Shown here in pieces: positions 2,519 through 12,596 of a stretch of DNA of 13,111 nucleotides. The DNA is from Fonticula alba ATCC 38817 (Eukaryota > Protista > Nucleariida), in the NCBI GenBank assembly GCA_000388065.2, contig KB932203.1; one strand, given 5' to 3'. The position numbers and the translations under genes were made by a program. How positions within the stretch are numbered: the stretch's first letter is position 1; every line of letters starts with the position of its first letter. Below the pieces are notes generated by a model. The model saw only the letters and a program-made list of their open reading frames with translations, did no database searches and was not told the DNA's origin.

Positions 2519-3172
2519 ACGTACATCCTGTCGGTGAATGTCACCCATGAGGACGGCAGCAAGAACACCCTCTCGGTGAACAAGCTCTATCGGGACTTCT
2601 ATGCGCTGCATGTGGCCCTGGTCACGAGCTTCCCCTCGGAGGCTGGACGGGTGTCCTCCTCGCGGACGGGGCGCACCCTGCCGGACCTGCCCACGCGGCC
2701 GGCGACTCTCATCGACTCGCAGGAGAGCTTCAGCGATGTGATTGGCCCACGCACGCGCAAGCCTTCCATGATCGGGGGGGATGGGGCCGCCGGGTCGGAC
2801 GGCGCCGCCGCCCGGCCAGCCATCACGCACCACCAGCGCCTGGCGCATCGGCGCCTGGCGCGCGATCTGAACCGCTATATGCAGGTGGTTCTTGGGCACC
2901 CGGCCACCGTGTCGCTCAGTGCCCCGGTTCGGACCTTCCTCCTGACGCAGTCCGGTGCCGTGACTCCCGGTGGCGTTGGGCGGGCAGGTGCCTCGGCGGC
3001 GGTGGGGGCTTCTTCGGCGGTGGCCACCGCCGCGTCGCGGGCTCCCAGCAGTCCGCTGGATGATGGCGCGCCGCAGCGGCCGCGCGCCTCCTCCCCCCCG
3101 GCCGAGGTGGCTTCGGTGGTGGCTCCGGGCAGTATCCGTTCCAACCCCTTCTTCGCCGCCGATCGCCGTTGA
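2519..3172 (+). CDS. Gene A terminal exon: PX (phox) domain of p40phox/Bem1 class, low-complexity tail, NPF motif, stop
   Basis: Branch CTAAT 2442-2446, acceptor CGCAG| 2518. Translation TYILSVNV...KLYRDFYALHVALVTSFPSEAG...RTLPDLP...DLNRYMQVVLGHPATVSLSAPVRTFL contains the PX hallmarks (YxDFxxL, LPxLP loop, LNxY helix, final VRxF). TGA at 3170-3172. Confidence 0.9.
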   Translation, partial: TYILSVNVTHEDGSKNTLSVNKLYRDFYALHVALVTSFPSEAGRVSSSRTGRTLPDLPTRPATLIDSQESFSDVIGPRTRKPSMIGGDGAAGSDGAAARPAITHHQRLAHRRLARDLNRYMQVVLGHPATVSLSAPVRTFLLTQSGAVTPGGVGRAGASAAVGASSAVATAASRAPSSPLDDGAPQRPRASSPPAEVASVVAPGSIRSNPFFAADRR

Positions 3173-3284
3173 GAGAGAGGGAGAGAGGGAGAGAGGGAGA
3201 GGCGACGGGCCCCCCCTTTTCGCTTGGTCGCCGCTTTTTCTTGCTCCCCCCCGATGTGCTGCGTCTTTGTCATGAAGGTGGCAC

Positions 3285-3304
3285 TGTGTGTGTGTGTGTG
3301 TGTG
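3285..3304. repeat. (TG)10 microsatellite
   Basis: Direct reading; lies in the presumed 3' UTR of gene A. Confidence 0.95.
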
Positions 3305-3344
3305 CGCGCGCACCATGCGCGCGTGCGCGCATCGCTCTCTCAGC

Positions 3345-3378
3345 TTTGTAATATCCACAGCTATTTATACAAATAATT
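3345..3378 (+). terminator. Putative polyadenylation signal region of gene A
   Basis: Isolated AT-rich island (TTTGTAATAT...TATTTATACAAATAATT) in GC-rich DNA, about 170-200 nt after the stop. Contains TGTA and AAATAA. Inference only. Confidence 0.4.
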
Positions 3379-3547
3379 CCCCTGTCCCCCCCTCCTCCTT
3401 GTTCCTGGAGCTCAGGGTGGCCCGCAAAATGCACCCCTCACCCCTCCTTATTTTTTCTGATGCCACATTGCGGTGTGTCGCCCGCCGCCCACGCCCCTGG
3501 TGGCCTTTTTTTCTCCGGGGTTTCCTCCATTCTTCTTCGCACCAAGG

Positions 3548-3567
3548 GAGAGAGAGAGAGAGAGAGA
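3548..3567. repeat. (GA)10 microsatellite
   Basis: Direct reading. Confidence 0.95.
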
Positions 3568-4623
3568 GGGGGGGAGGGCCCGGGCGGATGATGCGCCAAC
3601 GCGCTGAATGTCTCTCTCGGCAATTAGCCGCGGGAGGGTCACGAGACCACTCATCTGGATCACCAGTCTCGCTACGCTTCGGCTATCGTGGTCGTCTGAT
3701 CGGGAATCAATCACGCGCTACATTCGCCACGGAAAGGAAGAAACGGTTTCGCATTCCTCCCTCGCCGCTAGCCAGGGGGCATCCGAGGTGGCTAGGTGAA
3801 ATGCACTTCCCCCCCGCCCCTCAGCCTGCCGAGCCCTCGCGTGGGGGGGGGGGAGGGAGGGCGAGGGGGGCGTCGGGTGTGCCATATTGTAGGGTGCCCG
3901 CGTATACATTAGCCCACCAATCCCGGGGGGTCTGGCCAGGAGGCGGACTAGATACACGGGCGGGCGGGCGGGGGGAGGGGGCTGTATCGGGGTCTACCCT
4001 ACTGCCTAGTCGCGCTCATGGCCGGGCGCGTGCGTGGGCGCGCAAACAGGGCACGCGCACGCGGCGCCTGCCTGCCCCTCGGCCGGGTTTTTCTTCCCGG
4101 GGTGACGACGTTCGCCCTGACCGATCTGCCGGGGCCGGGTGTCAGGACCGTTATCCTGGCTCGCCGCGCGGCGGTGTGCTCCTCCACACATGCTGCACGC
4201 ACGTCCGTGTGTGGGCGCGCATGCGGGCGCTCGGGCAGGCGCAATGTCCGCCCCGGCCGGGGCCCCGTCACTCCGCTCAAGGGCCAGTGCCACCTCGCTT
4301 CCGCCGCCCAGCATCCACCACAAGGCAACCTCCCCTCTTCCTCCCTCCTTCCCGCCCTCTCCTGCCTGCTCCCTGTGCCATCGTCCCTCCTCGCCTCGTC
4401 GTCTTCCCCACCTCCCTGTTTGTTACTCCTCCCCGTCTGGCTCTGCTCGGGTGTTTGTGTCCCCTCAAATGGTACTCCCTCTCCGCTGTGCCGTCCCTTC
4501 TCGCCCGATTGTGCCCGCGCGCTTGGCTCACGCTCTGCCCTGCTTCCCGGTCCCCCCCCCCCCCCACCCCCCCTTTTGTGGAAACAGAGCGGCTCCTCCT
4601 CGCCGAGCCGCCGTCTGGCATCC

Positions 4624-5064
4624 ATGGCGCTGGCCGTGGCGCTGGCCCTGCTGGCCCTGTCTATGGCCACCGCGGTTGCGTCGCCCGCCCCGGCCCCGGC
4701 CAAGGGTGAGCCGGTTGTCGCCGCCGCCGCCGCCGGTGGCGCTTCGGCCAACGCCGCCCGCTCCGACGTGGAGCAGATCCGTCGTGCTGGTGCCGGCGGT
4801 CCGGCCACCGCCATCGTCCCCGGTCACTCGATCATCGCCAACGGCACGGCCCCGTCCATTGTCTATCTGGATGGTGTGCCGAGCTCCGTCGGGTCGAATG
4901 ACTGGCACCCGGTTCTGTCGCTGGAGTCGCATGAGGTCCCCTCGGCCCCGGTGTCTTGCAGCCCCTTCGTCACCTCGCAGTCGACCACCTCCCTGAGCCT
5001 GGGCGGCGGTCAGGCCGATGGCGGCAGCCTTCTGGACTGGGTCCGCCGGCCGACCACCGACTCG
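4624..5064 (+). CDS. Gene B exon 1: signal peptide and N-terminal region
   Basis: ATG 4624; MALAVALALLALSMATAVA-SPAP is a hydrophobic h-region with an AxA cleavage motif; coding-like codon usage. Donor TCG|GTACGT at 5065, phase 0. A short upstream exon may exist (see findings). Confidence 0.85.
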
Positions 5065-5218
5065 GTACGTGTGCATTGTGTGGCCCACGCGGCCTGTCCG
5101 CCGGCCTGGAGCTCCGCTTTGCCTCATTCTCATTGTGCCCCCCCCTTCTCCCGGTGGTCCCTGGCCCATCTCCGCGCCTGCTTCCCGGACTGACCATTGG
5201 CATGTACCCCGGATCCAG

Positions 5219-5713
5219 GCCAACTCCTATTGCCAGATTGACTTCTCTGCGGATGGTCGCTACGCCGCCGTGCTGCAGGGTGTTCCCGGGTCGGCCGGTG
5301 CCACGGTGCCGGTGGCCATGTGGAACCTGTGGAACTCCACCACCGCCTCGGCGGAGCTGATGGACACCTACGCCAGCTCCAATGTCTTCACCTCGCCGCG
5401 GTCGATCTCCCTGATTGCCGATGGCTCGGCTCTTGCCATTGCCAACTCCCTGGAGACGGTCATCTTCCGCGTCGGCATGAAGGAGCCTTCGCTGGTGATT
5501 AAGTGCTCGGCGGAGAAGGTTCTCTTCTCGCGTGATGGCAGCTCTCTCTTCCTGGTCCCCACCAACCCCCAGCGGGGTGTTCTGCTGCGGCACTCCTGGT
5601 CCGGCACCGAGGGTGGCCTGCGTGTCGGTGTCTCGCAGGAGCCCGGCACCAAGGGCCTGACTCCGTCCAGCCCGGCTGACACCGGGCAGGCCGGTTGCCC
5701 GAGCGTGTTTAAG
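5219..5713 (+). CDS. Gene B exon 2: WD40-like beta-propeller blades
   Basis: Branch CTGAC 5190-5194, acceptor CCAG| 5218. Repeated blade motifs IDFSADGRYAAV...AMWNL, ISLIADGSALAIA, VLFSRDGSSLFLV. Donor AAG|GTGCGT at 5714, phase 0. Confidence 0.9.
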
Positions 5714-5766
5714 GTGCGTCGTCTGCTTACTCTGTGTCTGTCATTTCTTTTCGCAAGCATGCAAGC

Positions 5767-5880
5767 GTGTGTGTGTGTGTGTGTGTGTGTGTGCATGTGT
5801 GTGTGTATGTATGTGTGTCTGTGCATGTGTGTGTGTATGTATGTGTGCGCATGTGTGTGTGTGTGTGTGTGCATGTGTGT
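5767..5880. repeat. Interrupted (TG)n microsatellite containing a ~30-bp duplication
   Basis: GTGCATGTGTGTGTGTATGTATGTGTG occurs at 5791 and again at 5821. Confidence 0.92.
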
Positions 5881-6000
5881 CTGTACACATTTGCATGCAT
5901 CTTTACACATCTGCGTGTATCTGTGCACATCTGCATGCATCTTTACACATCTGCGTGTATCTGTGCACATCTGCATGCATCTGTGCACATCTGCGTGTAT
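5881..6000. repeat. Minisatellite: three 40-bp units, each of four related 10-mers
   Basis: Consensus CTGTGCACAT-CTGCATGCAT-CTTTACACAT-CTGCGTGTAT at 5881, 5921 and 5961, with few substitutions. Confidence 0.92.
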
Positions 6001-6146
6001 CTGTGTCTGGGCACATGCTTGTGTATTTGCGCGGACGCCTGTGCATGTACATGTGCTCGAGTACCTTGACTCACCTGCTCTTCCCTTGATGTTTCTTCTT
6101 TTCCTTTCTCCCCGCCCGCCTCATGCTATCCTCCGTTCGAGCGCAG

Positions 6147-6680
6147 ACCGTTGAGAACCCCATCCAGGCGATTGCTGGCTCGCATTGCAGCACGGCCGTG
6201 GCCATCGGCACCAAGTCCCATGTGCATGTCATCGACGTGCTCATGGCCCTCACGCTGGACGATCTGCCCATCGACCCGGCCTCGTCGAAGGTGATCTCGA
6301 TTGCCTTCAGCACTCCGACGCGCTTCCTGGCGGCCGGTCTTGATGGCGGCCGGGTGATGATCTGGCAGCATGGCGCCGAGACCGGGCGCTACTCGCCCTT
6401 CCGGACCATCCAGCTTGGCCAGCAGGCCGGCATCGTGTCCATCTCCTTCAACAATGAGTCCCAGACCCTGCATGTGGCCCTGTCCAACGGGTCGGTGGCG
6501 CTGCTGCACCCGAGCGACGGCTTCGAGTTCAAGGGCCATGTCGCCCAGCTGACCGGCATCGGCGGTGTCAAGGGCTTCTCCCTGCATCCCTCCGGCAATC
6601 TGTATGGTGTGTGCTCCGGTGGTCCGGCTTCCGGCCCGGCTTCCATCTGGCACAACTCCCTGGGTCACTACTCCAAGCAG
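6147..6680 (+). CDS. Gene B exon 3: WD40-like beta-propeller blades
   Basis: Acceptor CGCAG| 6146 in frame. Blades VISIAFSTPTRFLAAGLDGGRVMIW, IVSISFNNESQTLHVALSNGSVALL, VKGFSLHPSGNLYGVCSGG...ASIW. Donor CAG|GTGTGT at 6681, phase 0. Confidence 0.9.
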
Positions 6681-6846
6681 GTGTGTTTGGCCTTTTGTCC
6701 TTGTGATGTTTTTTCATTTTCTCCGCGCTCCATTTTCCATTCTCCTCCTCATCGTGTGTCATTCGCTCATGCCTGGGCTCTTGTCTTTGCTCATGCTCGG
6801 CCTTTCTGCCTCGCTCCTCCCTTCTCTCCTTTTCTTCCTGTCTCTT

Positions 6847-6912
6847 CCTCCTCCCTCACCTCCTCCCTCACCTCCTCCCTCCCTCCCCCCCCCTCTCTCT
6901 CTCTCTCTCTCT
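6847..6912. repeat. (CCTCCTCCCTCA)~3 followed by poly-C and (CT)n
   Basis: Direct reading within intron 6681-6960. Confidence 0.85.
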
Positions 6913-6960
6913 CCTCCCCCTCCGCCCCCCGGTGTCATGACCAAAAAAAAAACCCCATAG

Positions 6961-7773
6961 CTCTCCGTGTCTGGCCTCATCTGGGGTATTTCCACTCGCG
7001 AGAGCCACAGCATCATCAGCCAGATCGTTGAGCGCCAGTTCAGCGAGGCGGCCGCCATCAACAGCAAGATCGACTCGCTGCAGGCCTCCATCGACGAGCA
7101 GACCGGCAAGATCACCGCCTACACCGAGGAGGAGAAGAGCCTGAAGGAGCGCCTGAACCATGTTCGCAAGCAGAAGAAGACCATTGAGATCATGGTGACC
7201 AAGCTCACCCAGGAGATCGACTACATCAAGAGCACCATCAGCGACCCGGCGTACAACCACCTGCTGGAGACCAACCGTCGCCGGCTCAAGGAGCTCGAGG
7301 CGGCCCTGGAGTACTACGACAGCCAGAGCAGCCAGGGCATCAAGACCCTGACCGCGCGCGACATCACCTTCTGGCTGGAGGAGCTCCGCCTGTCGAGCTA
7401 TGCGCCGCTCTTTGTGGCCCACAGCATCGATGGTATCGGCCTCGAGGATCTGACTCTGTCTTTCCTGCATCGTTACATTGGCATGCCGGTCAATGCGGCC
7501 AGCAAGCTGATGCTGCACGCGCGGTCGGTGCTGTCCGGCAGCGCGCCGCCGACTGGCGGCCTGTACAGCCTGGATTCGGCGGCCGCCGCCGAGTGGCTGC
7601 GGTCCAAGGTCGGCGGCAAGGTCGGCGAGCTGCTGGCCGTGCACAATGCCCAGCTCAACGGTCGGTCCCTGGCGCTGATGGATCTCCAGACCCTGCTGGA
7701 CCTGGGTGTGTCGCGTTTCTCTGACGCGCGTACCGTCCTGGCGGCCGTCCGTGCCGAGACTGGCGGCGTGTAG
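6961..7773 (+). CDS. Gene B terminal exon: coiled coil (~7030-7320) plus two SAM domains (~7345-7530, ~7567-7752)
   Basis: Acceptor CATAG| 6960 in frame. Heptad-patterned charged helix (IDSLQASIDEQTGKITAY...LKERLNHV...LTQEIDYI). SAM1 DITFWLEELRLSSYAPLFVAHSIDGIGLEDLT...IGM and SAM2 AAEWLRSK...NGRSLALMDLQTLLDLGV match the SAM pattern W....V..WL...L..Y...F....IDG..L..L....L..LG. TAG at 7771-7773. Confidence 0.88.
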   Translation, partial: LSVSGLIWGISTRESHSIISQIVERQFSEAAAINSKIDSLQASIDEQTGKITAYTEEEKSLKERLNHVRKQKKTIEIMVTKLTQEIDYIKSTISDPAYNHLLETNRRRLKELEAALEYYDSQSSQGIKTLTARDITFWLEELRLSSYAPLFVAHSIDGIGLEDLTLSFLHRYIGMPVNAASKLMLHARSVLSGSAPPTGGLYSLDSAAAAEWLRSKVGGKVGELLAVHNAQLNGRSLALMDLQTLLDLGVSRFSDARTVLAAVRAETGGV

Positions 7774-8020
7774 GGCAAAGAAGGGCCATCCCCATGAAGG
7801 CGGGGAGGCAGGCATGTTGTGCGTGTATTCGCGTGTGCGTGTGCGTGTGTGTGGCCGGTGTGTGGCCGGTGTGGCAATGTGTCGGTGCGAGAGGAGGCCC
7901 CCTTCGCCTCTTAGCCCGTGCGTCATCCATCGGAGGCGCGCCGGGGAAGGGCCCTGTGGGGTCTTTTCCCTTCCTTCTGGGGATTGCCCCGATGCGTGCA
8001 CGCCCGCGCACCAACCCACA

Positions 8021-8060
8021 CACGCACACACACGCACACACACGCACACACACGCACACA
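8021..8060. repeat. (CACGCACACA)4
   Basis: Four perfect 10-mers downstream of the gene B stop. Confidence 0.95.
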
Positions 8061-8747
8061 CGCTTTCCGATGCACATCCCTCTTCCCTCTCCATCGCTGT
8101 TCCTGTCCACCTATCTATCTCTCTATCTCTCTATCTCTCTATATATATCTTTCCCTCCCTCTCCCTCCCTCTCTCTGCTTCGCCCCCTCCCTTCCCCCCT
8201 CAATACACAGCACAATGCAAACGGTGATTCATCCGTGTGGACGTCTTGTCGCCGGCAAACGGGGCACTCGCGAGATTTGCGCCCATTGTGGGCCTTACGC
8301 CGTGTTCTCCTGCCTGTCGAGCCGGCCCTCCTGCCGCCGGGAGACCCCTCACGCGGGGTTTCCGTCATGCCATCGTCGCAGGATATTGTCTCTTGGCCGC
8401 GGCCTCGGTCCATCCTCGACCTTGTCCCCGTTCCCTGGGCCCCAAGGTCCGGTCTCTGCGCCTCTCGCCGGGGCCGCATGCCGGTCCTGTTTTGTTAAGA
8501 CAGTGGAGGCCACAAGAGCAGCGCTGATCATACGGACGCGGGTGGGGGTCCGCATGCAAGGCCGAGCAAGTCTCCCCCCCGCTTCTCTGCGAAGGTGATG
8601 TTGCCAGTGTCAGTGCCGATACTCGATTGGCCCTCCAGGCCGATGGGCCAAGCTCGGCTCGCGGCAATCCACTGATTGGCAGTGCCTGTCGCGATGCGTT
8701 GTCGAGGAGCGAGGAGAAAAGGGTGTGTCTGGGGGGGGGGGGGGGGG

Positions 8748-9348
8748 NNNNNNNNNNNNNNNNNNNNNNNNNNNNNNNNNNNNNNNNNNNNNNNNNNNNN
8801 NNNNNNNNNNNNNNNNNNNNNNNNNNNNNNNNNNNNNNNNNNNNNNNNNNNNNNNNNNNNNNNNNNNNNNNNNNNNNNNNNNNNNNNNNNNNNNNNNNNN
8901 NNNNNNNNNNNNNNNNNNNNNNNNNNNNNNNNNNNNNNNNNNNNNNNNNNNNNNNNNNNNNNNNNNNNNNNNNNNNNNNNNNNNNNNNNNNNNNNNNNNN
9001 NNNNNNNNNNNNNNNNNNNNNNNNNNNNNNNNNNNNNNNNNNNNNNNNNNNNNNNNNNNNNNNNNNNNNNNNNNNNNNNNNNNNNNNNNNNNNNNNNNNN
9101 NNNNNNNNNNNNNNNNNNNNNNNNNNNNNNNNNNNNNNNNNNNNNNNNNNNNNNNNNNNNNNNNNNNNNNNNNNNNNNNNNNNNNNNNNNNNNNNNNNNN
9201 NNNNNNNNNNNNNNNNNNNNNNNNNNNNNNNNNNNNNNNNNNNNNNNNNNNNNNNNNNNNNNNNNNNNNNNNNNNNNNNNNNNNNNNNNNNNNNNNNNNN
9301 NNNNNNNNNNNNNNNNNNNNNNNNNNNNNNNNNNNNNNNNNNNNNNNN
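8748..9348. other. Assembly gap (601 N) flanked by poly-G on both sides
   Basis: N run; G17 on the left and G11 on the right. Confidence 1.
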
Positions 9349-11931: not shown

Positions 11932-12596
11932 NNNNNNNNNNNNNNNNNNNNNNNNNNNNNNNNNNNNNNNNNNNNNNNNNNNNNNNNNNNNNNNNNNNNN
12001 NNNNNNNNNNNNNNNNNNNNNNNNNNNNNNNNNNNNNNNNNNNNNNNNNNNNNNNNNNNNNNNNNNNNNNNNNNNNNNNNNNNNNNNNNNNNNNNNNNNN
12101 NNNNNNNNNNNNNNNNNNNNNNNNNNNNNNNNNNNNNNNNNNNNNNNNNNNNNNNNNNNNNNNNNNNNNNNNNNNNNNNNNNNNNNNNNNNNNNNNNNNN
12201 NNNNNNNNNNNNNNNNNNNNNNNNNNNNNNNNNNNNNNNNNNNNNNNNNNNNNNNNNNNNNNNNNNNNNNNNNNNNNNNNNNNNNNNNNNNNNNNNNNNN
12301 NNNNNNNNNNNNNNNNNNNNNNNNNNNNNNNNNNNNNNNNNNNNNNNNNNNNNNNNNNNNNNNNNNNNNNNNNNNNNNNNNNNNNNNNNNNNNNNNNNNN
12401 NNNNNNNNNNNNNNNNNNNNNNNNNNNNNNNNNNNNNNNNNNNNNNNNNNNNNNNNNNNNNNNNNNNNNNNNNNNNNNNNNNNNNNNNNNNNNNNNNNNN
12501 NNNNNNNNNNNNNNNNNNNNNNNNNNNNNNNNNNNNNNNNNNNNNNNNNNNNNNNNNNNNNNNNNNNNNNNNNNNNNNNNNNNNNNNNNNNNNNNN
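11932..12596. other. Assembly gap (665 N)
   Basis: N run; flanked by a C run on the left and (CT)n on the right. Confidence 1.

What the first reader, a model, noticed from the sequence alone, without database searches (positions are those of the whole stretch)
4624..7773. Apparently secreted beta-propeller / coiled-coil / tandem-SAM protein with no transmembrane segment
Seen: four in-frame exons give 760 aa comprising signal peptide, WD40-like blades, a long coiled coil and two SAM domains, ending ETGGV. There is no KDEL/HDEL, no GPI-type hydrophobic tail and no second long hydrophobic stretch. All 6 Cys and all 4 N-glycosylation sequons (NGT, NST, NES, NGS) lie in exons 1-3; the coiled-coil/SAM exon has none. 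Established: SAM domains are almost always cytosolic or nuclear oligomerisation/polymer modules. STIM has a luminal SAM but also EF-hands and a TM helix; WDSUB1 has WD40+SAM but no signal peptide and a U-box. Inference: this is neither. It could be an extracellular or luminal self-polymerising scaffold displaying a ligand-binding propeller (matrix, adhesion or aggregation role in an amoeboid protist). I do not recognise this architecture as a described family.
Basis: partly seen in the sequence, partly recalled or inferred. Interest (0 to 1): 0.78.

Follow-up and report, generated by a model that had tools for sequence, protein, structure and literature searches.

The report
Signal-peptide WD40, coiled-coil, tandem-SAM orphan protein
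The amoeba Fonticula alba has one real, already annotated gene for a protein with no detectable relatives, in which a secretion-type leader is followed by parts (WD40 propeller, coiled coil, two SAM domains) that normally work inside the cell, so whether it is exported is open and needs an experiment.

Summary
The four exons (4624-5064, 5219-5713, 6147-6680, 6961-7773, + strand) have GT/AG borders, phase 0 and strong third-position GC. Each maps letter for letter onto Fonticula alba H696_02278, a 773-aa "hypothetical protein". That record adds 13 N-terminal residues through a start codon at 4469-4471 and an intron at 4472-4587.

Domains:
- Confirmed: one N-terminal hydrophobic segment and no second one; a roughly 7-bladed WD40-type propeller; about 100 residues of heptad helix; a firm SAM.
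- Weaker: the second SAM is below threshold by sequence and SAM-like only in an alignment-guided model.

Relatives: an exhaustive HMMER search with exon 4 and word searches with the whole protein and the propeller found nothing beyond generic SAM or WD40 hits. The genome holds no paralogue.

Localisation: the leader closely resembles those of this genome's own calreticulin and PDI. Secretion still rests on that segment alone. The Cys and sequon clustering is not significant, and no RNA data could be obtained. The SAM pair looks most like the liprin/kazrin packed tandem, not a known polymer.

I put export or luminal location at about 45%. A cytosolic membrane-anchored or later-start protein is the main rival. 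The architecture is a new combination of ordinary modules and of moderate interest.

The parts
4469..4471 (+). Start codon of the deposited model (M1 of H696_02278), the last three bases of a 5' exon
Evidence: This is the only ATG between 4245 and 4623 and it is followed by GT. The placement is inferred, with no transcript data.
4472..4587 (+). Intron 0 (116 nt, GTACTC...AG, contains a C14 run)
4588..5064 (+). Exon coding residues 2-160: n-region, hydrophobic segment, Ala/Gly/Pro-rich linker, start of the propeller.
   Evidence: GC3 contrast becomes clear only from about 4740.
4615..4677 (+). Hydrophobic h-region (residues 11-31), with a small-residue A-V-A site before Ser32-Pro33. Candidate signal peptide or signal anchor.
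   Evidence: KD-19 of 2.32, the only window above 1.4. Such a window falls in the first 40 residues in 0.2% of shuffles. Same style as the calreticulin and PDI leaders of this genome. Encoded by an imperfect 21-nt duplication.
4903..6665 (+). WD40-type beta-propeller, residues about 107-498, spread over three exons
   Evidence: The ESM Atlas model of this protein aligns about 300 residues to 7-bladed WD40 domains, TM 0.62 by the query and 0.86 by the target. Pfam and PDB sequence hits cover only 6192-6653. No Pfam hit for residues 80-335.
5065..5218 (+). Intron 1 (154 nt)
5219..5713 (+). Exon coding residues 161-325
5714..6146 (+). Intron 2 (433 nt) with a (GT)n microsatellite and a 40-nt tandem repeat
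6147..6680 (+). Exon coding residues 326-503, with the canonical WD40 blades
6681..6960 (+). Intron 3 (280 nt, CT-rich repeats, A10 before the acceptor). An in-frame TAG lies directly before exon 4.
   Evidence: Exon 4 has no ATG for its first 78 codons, so it must be spliced on.
6994..7326 (+). Coiled-coil-type helical region, residues about 515-625, in two or three segments broken near Gly552 and Pro599
   Evidence: Helices 516-545, 559-596 and 599-623 in a low-confidence AF2 model. Heptad a/d scan. Weak coiled-coil Pfam hits.
7345..7536 (+). SAM domain 1, residues 632-695
   Evidence: Pfam SAM_2 37.9 bits and SAM_1 32.9 bits, above cut-offs. hhalign 97%, E 8e-11. Five helices at pLDDT 84-92.
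7567..7761 (+). SAM-like domain 2, residues 706-770 (divergent)
   Evidence: Pfam SAM_2 16.7 bits, below cut-off. hhalign E 0.035. Five-helix unit at pLDDT 78-88 in a model guided by a SAM alignment. Both units align to tandem SAM structures.
7771..7773 (+). Stop codon TAG after ...ETGGV
   Evidence: No coding-type periodicity from 7773 to the gap at 8748.

Best explanation
This is one real, spliced, species-restricted gene (Fonticula alba H696_02278). Its product is an oligomeric scaffold built from the following parts, in order:
- an N-terminal ER-type signal sequence;
- a low-complexity linker;
- a roughly 7-bladed WD40-type propeller, the likely partner- or ligand-binding face;
- about 100 residues of coiled coil, for dimer or trimer formation;
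- a liprin/kazrin-like pair of SAM domains, for further protein-protein contacts.

The most likely course runs as follows. Translation starts at the first AUG (4469, or 4624 if intron 0 is not used). The hydrophobic segment engages SRP/Sec61 with its N-terminus on the cytosolic side and is cut after A-V-A. The rest of the protein then enters the ER lumen. It has no retention signal, no second membrane segment and no GPI tail, so it would travel on to a post-ER compartment or the outside, where it would act as a multivalent binder.

Shown: the gene structure, the domains and the absence of relatives. Inferred: the start codon used, translocation, cleavage, oligomeric state and any ligand. The confidence given is for the extracytosolic topology. 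For the gene and domain architecture alone it is about 0.9.
For: Gene and exons.

No coding-like exon upstream to the neighbouring gene or downstream to the first gap, so no missed TM exon is visible.

Every candidate first AUG lies before the hydrophobic segment; the only ATGs between 4245 and 4662 are at 4469 and 4624.

The leader has the classical signal-peptide layout:
- an n-region with two Arg;
- 21 uncharged residues at KD 2.32;
- small residues at -3 and -1, with Pro at +2;
- a net-neutral C-flank, which by the charge-difference rule puts the N-terminus in the cytosol and the body outside.

Positive controls from the same genome: calreticulin (ends RDEL) and PDI (ends HGDL) carry leaders of the same build, with an S/P/R-rich n-region, an 18-19-residue Ala/Leu-rich core and an AxA site before Ser.

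Domains: propeller; coiled coil; SAM tandem.
Against: WD40 repeats and SAM domains are, by established knowledge, almost always cytosolic or nuclear. In the paper library, the phrases 'luminal SAM domain' and 'extracellular SAM domain' led to STIM papers in every listed hit whose title or abstract shows its subject. None of the 15 papers listed for the WD40 search contained 'secreted WD40' or 'extracellular WD40'.

The closest structural matches of the C-terminal half are cytosolic scaffolds: liprin-beta, kazrin and SARM1.

No enrichment of Cys or N-glycosylation sequons supports an oxidising or glycosylating environment.

The hydrophobic core is encoded by a GC-rich 21-nt duplication, in a stretch where coding periodicity cannot be seen.

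No dedicated signal-peptide predictor, no RNA evidence and no orthologues to test conservation of the leader.
Confidence: 0.45

Rival explanations
1. Cytosol-facing scaffold. The WD40, coiled-coil and SAM body stays in the cytosol, where such domains normally work. There are three ways this could happen. The hydrophobic N-terminus could be an uncleaved membrane anchor with the body on the cytosolic side (ER, mitochondrial outer membrane or another organelle). It could be skipped because translation starts at the Met at 4663. Or leaky scanning could give both forms.
For: Domain-family priors (established knowledge). The nearest structural analogues of the coiled-coil/SAM half are cytosolic: liprin-beta, kazrin, SARM1 and WDSUB1. 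The uncharged stretch of 21-23 residues is long enough to span a membrane. Both upstream AUGs have a pyrimidine at -3, so leaky scanning to 4663 is conceivable. No Cys or sequon signal. Another first-stage note in this genome describes a signal-peptide-like N-terminus on a BCS1-type ATPase, a family whose N-terminal segment is a membrane anchor and not a secretion signal (untested here).
Against: The Arg-Arg N-flank against a neutral C-flank predicts the opposite orientation. No positively charged C-flank of the kind seen in Tom20/Tom70/OM45-type or P450-type anchors (from knowledge of those families). The leader matches bona fide ER leaders of this genome, including their core length. The first-AUG rule places the hydrophobic segment in the protein for any start site upstream of 4624.
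Confidence: 0.38
2. Type II membrane protein. The segment works as a signal anchor that is not cleaved, so the propeller, coiled coil and SAM pair are displayed on the luminal or outer face, tethered by the N-terminus.
For: The uncharged stretch is long (21-23 residues) and the N-flank is positive. The Ala/Gly/Pro-rich linker after it could serve as a stalk.
Against: There is a good A-x-A site with Ser-Pro after it. Control leaders of soluble ER proteins in this genome are just as long.
Confidence: 0.1
3. Mis-joined model: the propeller exons and the coiled-coil/SAM exon belong to two genes, or the gene is a non-expressed prediction.
For: No transcript evidence could be obtained. The protein has no relatives that would confirm the join.
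Against: Exon 4 opens directly after an in-frame TAG at the acceptor. It has coding-type GC3 from its first codon and no ATG for 78 codons. Exon 3 ends in phase 0 at a GT exactly where the coding signal stops. The deposited annotation makes the same join.
Confidence: 0.05

Closest known systems
WDSUB1 (WD repeat, SAM and U-box domain-containing protein 1)
   Same: A WD40 propeller followed by a SAM domain in one chain. WDSUB1 clusters appear among the structural matches of SAM unit 1.
   Different: No U-box. It has a coiled coil and a second SAM-like unit instead, plus a hydrophobic N-terminal leader. No sequence relationship was detected.
Liprin-beta / liprin-alpha / kazrin (coiled coil + packed SAM tandem)
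   Same: A coiled coil directly followed by tandem SAM domains. The two-unit model superposes as a whole on them: TM 0.67 and 0.65 over 147 residues, and 0.57 on PDB 3tad.
   Different: Two units, not three. No liprin or kazrin coiled-coil Pfam signature. The N-terminal propeller and leader are absent from liprins. No sequence-level kinship.
STIM1/2
   Same: The only established case of a SAM domain on the luminal or extracellular side, behind a signal peptide (established knowledge).
   Different: No EF-hands. No transmembrane helix after the SAM. The coiled coil lies before the SAM, not after it. The propeller is absent in STIM.
SARM1 / caskin tandem SAMs
   Same: The top Foldseek E-values are to the SARM1 SAM1-2 tandem, and each unit is a SAM fold.
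   Different: The relative orientation of the two units differs (rmsd 11-15, TM 0.35-0.41). No ARM or TIR domains, and none of caskin's other domains.
Coronin / POC1-type 'propeller then coiled coil' proteins; myocilin-type secreted 'coiled coil + propeller' proteins
   Same: A propeller combined with an oligomerising coiled coil. In myocilin and other olfactomedins this pairing is secreted.
   Different: No coronin- or olfactomedin-specific Pfam domains were found. The domain order is reversed relative to myocilin. These are resemblances recalled from knowledge, not tested by structure.

Membership tests
WDSUB1 | N-terminal WD40 propeller | tested here: met
WDSUB1 | SAM domain after the propeller | tested here: met
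WDSUB1 | C-terminal U-box | tested here: not met
   No U-box family in the Pfam scans at E up to 1-10. The C-terminus is an all-helical SAM-like unit.
WDSUB1 | Sequence kinship | tested here: not met
   HMMER of exon 4 against 1.84 billion representatives gave only itself plus 5 weak hits, all SAM arrays or coiled-coil proteins and none with a WD40 part.
STIM | Signal peptide | tested here: inconclusive
   Classical n/h/c layout by inspection and by comparison with controls. No predictor or experiment.
STIM | EF-hand pair packed on the SAM | tested here: not met
   No EF-hand family in the Pfam scan.
STIM | Transmembrane helix after the SAM | tested here: not met
   No hydrophobic window above KD 1.4 outside the N-terminus.
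Liprin / kazrin | Coiled coil followed by a packed SAM tandem | tested here: met
   The model was alignment-guided; pTM 0.57.
Liprin / kazrin | Three SAM domains (liprin homology region) | tested here: not met
   Only two units before the stop codon.
Liprin / kazrin | Family-specific coiled-coil signature or sequence kinship | tested here: not met
   No such Pfam hit among the families listed. The 5 weak hits of the exhaustive HMMER search are SAM arrays and a coiled-coil protein, and none carries a source name.
Pfam SAM (SAM_1/SAM_2) | Score above the gathering cut-off, unit 1 | tested here: met
   37.9 bits against 20.5 and 32.9 bits against 23.
Pfam SAM (SAM_1/SAM_2) | Score above the gathering cut-off, unit 2 | tested here: not met
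   16.7 bits against 20.5; hhalign E 0.035. The five-helix SAM-like fold appears only in a model guided by a SAM alignment.
WD40 repeat propeller | Pfam WD40 repeat above cut-off | tested here: not met
   PF00400 22.6 bits against 27. All propeller families are far below their cut-offs.
WD40 repeat propeller | Closed 7-bladed WD40 fold | tested here: met
   The Atlas model of this protein (mean pLDDT 0.60) aligns 300 residues to WD40 domains, TM 0.86 by the target. My own single-sequence AF2 model was too poor to use.
Cleavable ER signal peptide | Positive n-region, hydrophobic core, small residues at -3 and -1 | tested here: met
   Same build as the calreticulin and PDI leaders of this genome.
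Cleavable ER signal peptide | Actual translocation and cleavage | not testable with these tools
   Needs microsome, tagging or proteomic experiments.

The most novel reading that the evidence does not exclude
A truly exported or luminal WD40-propeller, coiled-coil and tandem-SAM protein. This would be the first SAM tandem, and one of very few canonical WD40 propellers, to work outside the cytosol apart from STIM. It would serve as a multivalent extracellular or phagosomal binder, for example in bacterial capture or in the secreted stalk matrix of this aggregative amoeba.
Probability: 0.4. Interest if true: 0.7.

Novelty: new variant of a known kind. Interest (0 to 1): 0.45.

Why it matters
If the body of this protein really lies outside the cytosol, two of the most reliably intracellular interaction modules of eukaryotes, WD40 and SAM, would have been put to extracellular or luminal use in a lineage that evolved aggregative multicellularity on its own. 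That would give a new kind of oligomerising matrix or adhesion scaffold to study.

If the body is cytosolic, the case is a useful warning. Signal-peptide-like, Ala/Leu-rich N-termini in this GC-rich genome cannot be taken at face value. The protein would then be an ordinary, if lineage-specific, membrane-tethered scaffold.

Either way the question can be settled with one simple translocation or tagging experiment.

Tried and rejected
No junction or start-site evidence exists in this report.
- Joined spliced protein. Exons were searched one by one by reference. Whole-protein work used the database record P0001 that a search returned.
- The look-up of encoding contigs for P0001: nothing on record.
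- ESM Atlas feature search with exon 4: no usable hit.
- AF2 of the whole protein without an alignment: mean pLDDT 37.5, unusable for fold search.
- Self-comparison of the two propeller halves by BLASTP: nothing. Pfam on residues 80-335: nothing.
- Word search with the propeller alone at E up to 10: one generic WD40 protein at E 0.2.
- A third secretory control, Peptidase_C1, had no match in the genome.
- Literature: no paper mentions H696_02278. The Fonticula papers found held nothing on this gene.
- Missed TM exon: rejected. No coding-type periodicity upstream (3172-4560) or downstream (7773-8747), and the introns are microsatellite or CT-rich.
- Antisense ORF 6868-8094: rejected. It is a GC-rich artefact whose third positions lack the GC excess.
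- GPI or KDEL-type signals: rejected.
Full report
**Where we are.** The window is contig 3, 2339951-2353061, of a 31.3-Mb, 214-contig assembly. A protein returned by the exhaustive search carries the NCBI name "hypothetical protein H696_02278 [Fonticula alba]" and the UniRef name "SAM domain-containing protein". So the organism is the aggregative nucleariid amoeba Fonticula alba, and the gene is already annotated, without a function.

**Checking the gene model.**
- All introns are GT...AG and all junctions are phase 0.
- In the claimed frames the third codon position is 0.8-0.97 G+C. This contrast vanishes inside the introns.
- Exon 4 begins right after an in-frame TAG at its acceptor. It shows coding-type composition from its first codon and has no ATG for 78 codons, so it cannot be a separate gene.
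- Each exon translation occurs exactly in the deposited 773-aa protein P0001, at 14-160, 161-325, 326-503 and 504-773.
Exons were searched singly by reference, and whole-protein analyses used the database record P0001.

**A longer N-terminus.** Residues 2-160 equal the translation of 4588-5064, so Met1 must be spliced on. The only ATG between 4245 and 4623 is at 4469-4471. It is followed directly by a GT donor, and 4586-4587 is an AG behind a C-rich tract. I therefore place a 116-nt intron at 4472-4587. This is inferred from the deposited protein, not from transcripts. It matters because it adds an n-region with two Arg in front of the hydrophobic core.

**No missed exon.** Between the upstream gene's end (about 3172) and 4560, and from the stop codon to the first assembly gap (8748), no stretch shows coding-type periodicity: the maximum contrast is 0.15, against 0.25-0.55 in the exons. 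The introns are a (GT)n microsatellite, a 40-nt tandem repeat and CT-rich repeats. A hidden transmembrane exon is therefore unlikely. The long antisense ORF 6868-8094 lacks third-position GC excess and is an artefact of GC-rich DNA.

**Domains.**
- *Hydrophobic segment.* Only one exists: residues 11-33 carry no charge, and the best 19-residue Kyte-Doolittle window is 2.32 while the next best in the protein is 1.36. A window that hydrophobic falls in the first 40 residues in 0.2% of shuffles. There is no KDEL-type end and no hydrophobic tail.
- *Propeller.* Sequence evidence covers only exon 3. Pfam propeller families match at 1e-4 to 7e-6 but far below their cut-offs, and PF00400 scores 22.6 bits against a cut-off of 27. 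Notchless WD40 in the PDB matches at 1e-6. Residues 80-335 hit nothing. However, the ESM Atlas holds this exact protein (mean pLDDT 0.60). Its model aligns about 300 residues between 107 and 498 to 7-bladed WD40 domains, with TM 0.62 by the query and 0.86 by a 307-aa target. So a complete WD40-type propeller over exons 1-3 is supported.
- *Whole-protein model.* My own single-sequence AF2 run failed (pLDDT 37.5). It still shows strands through 225-481 and helices at 516-545, 559-596 and 599-623.
- *Coiled coil.* A heptad scan finds continuous a/d hydrophobicity over about 513-605, strongest at 562-598. "Long coiled coil" is fair, in two or three segments.
- *SAM unit 1 (632-695).* This is firm: SAM_2 37.9 bits and SAM_1 32.9 bits, both above cut-offs, and hhalign 97%, E 8e-11, against an alignment of unrelated SAM repeats.
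- *SAM unit 2 (706-770).* This is not established by sequence: 16.7 bits and hhalign E 0.035. It does keep the Trp-Leu ... Gly ... Leu-Gly-Val landmarks in an alignment with SAM arrays.
- *SAM pair model.* AF2 of residues 618-773 with that 12-row alignment gave pLDDT 82 and two five-helix units. Foldseek aligned both units to tandem SAM structures. The caveat is that the alignment of SAM repeats may have steered the second unit into a SAM fold.

**What the SAM pair resembles.** As a rigid two-domain body the model fits:
- liprin-beta, at TM 0.57 and rmsd 4.8 on PDB 3tad and TM 0.67 and rmsd 3.6 on an Atlas cluster;
- kazrin, at TM 0.65.

It fits the SARM1 ring tandem and caskin poorly as a unit (TM 0.35-0.41, rmsd 11-15). 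Liprins and kazrin are "coiled coil then packed SAM tandem" proteins. From knowledge of those structures, their SAM domains bind each other and partners and do not form head-to-tail polymers. With a model pTM of 0.57, the inter-domain geometry is only moderately trustworthy.

**Relatives.**
- HMMER of exon 4 against 1.84 billion representatives found the protein itself and five weak hits (8e-6 to 8e-4). These are unnamed SAM arrays or coiled-coil proteins from metagenomes.
- Word-indexed searches with the whole protein and with the propeller alone at E up to 10 found only itself and one generic WD40 protein.
- The genome has no paralogue.
"No relatives" is therefore strong for the coiled-coil/SAM half and weaker for the propeller.
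- No paper mentions the locus tag.

**Is it secreted?** This is the heart of the finding, and it cannot be settled here.

For export:
- Every candidate first AUG (4469 or 4624) precedes the hydrophobic core.
- The layout is classical: an Arg-Arg n-region, an uncharged core, A-V-A before Ser-Pro, and a neutral C-flank, which by the charge-difference rule puts the body outside.
- As a positive control I located calreticulin and protein disulfide isomerase in the same genome and read their first exons. Both have an S/P/R-rich n-region, an 18-19-residue Ala/Leu-rich core and an A-x-A site before Ser. They end in RDEL and HGDL. The leader of H696_02278 is of exactly this local style, including its length. 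This removes the objection that the core is too long for a cleaved signal.

Against export:
- WD40 and SAM are among the most consistently intracellular modules. In the paper library the phrases for luminal or extracellular SAM domains led to STIM papers wherever a listed hit's title or abstract shows its subject, and none of the 15 papers listed for the WD40 search held "secreted WD40" or "extracellular WD40".
- The closest analogues of the C-terminal half are cytosolic scaffolds.
Four sequons against 2.7 expected gives P = 0.27, and zero in exon 4 against 1.15 expected is unremarkable. All six Cys falling in the first 503 residues has a chance of about 0.08 (my arithmetic).
- The core is encoded by an imperfect 21-nt GC-rich duplication, in a stretch where coding periodicity is uninformative.
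- Both upstream AUGs have a pyrimidine at -3, so some initiation at the Met at 4663, which would give a leaderless protein, is conceivable.
- Earlier first-stage notes on this genome record signal-like N-termini on a BCS1-type ATPase and on a SET-domain protein. I did not test these. They show that the pattern recurs here, whether as biology or as artefact.

**Weighing.** I take a low prior for an extracytosolic WD40+SAM protein, of the order of 1-2%. I multiply it by a large likelihood ratio for a first-AUG leader of this quality. That gives roughly even odds. My estimates are:
- about 45% cleaved signal with the body in the lumen or outside;
- about 10% type II anchor;
- about 38% cytosol-facing or leaderless;
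- about 5% mis-joined or unexpressed model.

**Comparison with known families.** The protein works like a WD40 scaffold fused to a liprin/kazrin-type coiled-coil and SAM module. It is not a member of any of these families:
- WDSUB1: no U-box and no kinship.
- STIM: no EF-hands and no TM after the SAM.
- Liprin/kazrin: two SAM units, not three, no family signature and no kinship.
- SARM1: no ARM or TIR.

It is a lineage-restricted new combination of ordinary modules. The annotation exists already. The unusual point is the leader.

**Not done.** Signal-peptide predictors and multimer modelling were also not available. The experiments listed under next steps would decide the matter quickly.

Noticed in passing
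window 4629-4668: The hydrophobic core of the leader is encoded by an imperfect 21-nt tandem duplication (1.9 copies, GCN/CTG-rich). This suggests it arose or grew by a local repeat.
   Followed up: partly
window 5767-6005: Intron 2 carries a (GT)59 microsatellite followed by a 40-nt unit repeated 3.3 times at 94% identity.
   Followed up: no
window 6846-6952: Intron 3 holds CT-rich 12-nt and 27-nt repeats and an A10 run just before the acceptor. The exon 3 frame stays open through the whole intron to 7031 (ORF 6123-7031), so intron retention would give a propeller-only protein with a different tail.
   Followed up: no
window 8748-9348 and 11932-12596: Two runs of N (601 and 665 bases), flanked by G or C homopolymers. 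They are assembly gaps or withheld stretches, and nothing can be said about genes across them.
   Followed up: no
L006 (G000:C7:1631093-1634686) and L008 (G000:C4:107418-110927, minus strand): Fonticula calreticulin ends in RDEL and its PDI in HGDL. ER retrieval signals in this organism therefore seem to deviate from KDEL/HDEL, so a screen for KDEL or HDEL alone would miss ER residents.
   Followed up: partly
P0006 (342 aa, JGI metagenome): One of the weak SAM hits is an array of four SAM repeats behind a short hydrophobic N-terminus. It may be another exported SAM array in an uncultured organism, or a truncated gene call.
   Followed up: no
window 6868-8094, minus strand: A 408-aa antisense ORF lies over exon 4. 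It has no coding-type third-position bias and is a by-product of GC-rich coding DNA.
   Followed up: yes
ESM Atlas feature hits for P0001:75-510: The two nearest clusters by language-model features are unnamed 721-aa and 724-aa ANAPC4_WD40-only proteins, of similar length to this protein (score 0.95, 166-168 shared features, taxa not recorded). Their sequences could not be fetched, so possible distant kin with the same layout remain unchecked.
   Followed up: no
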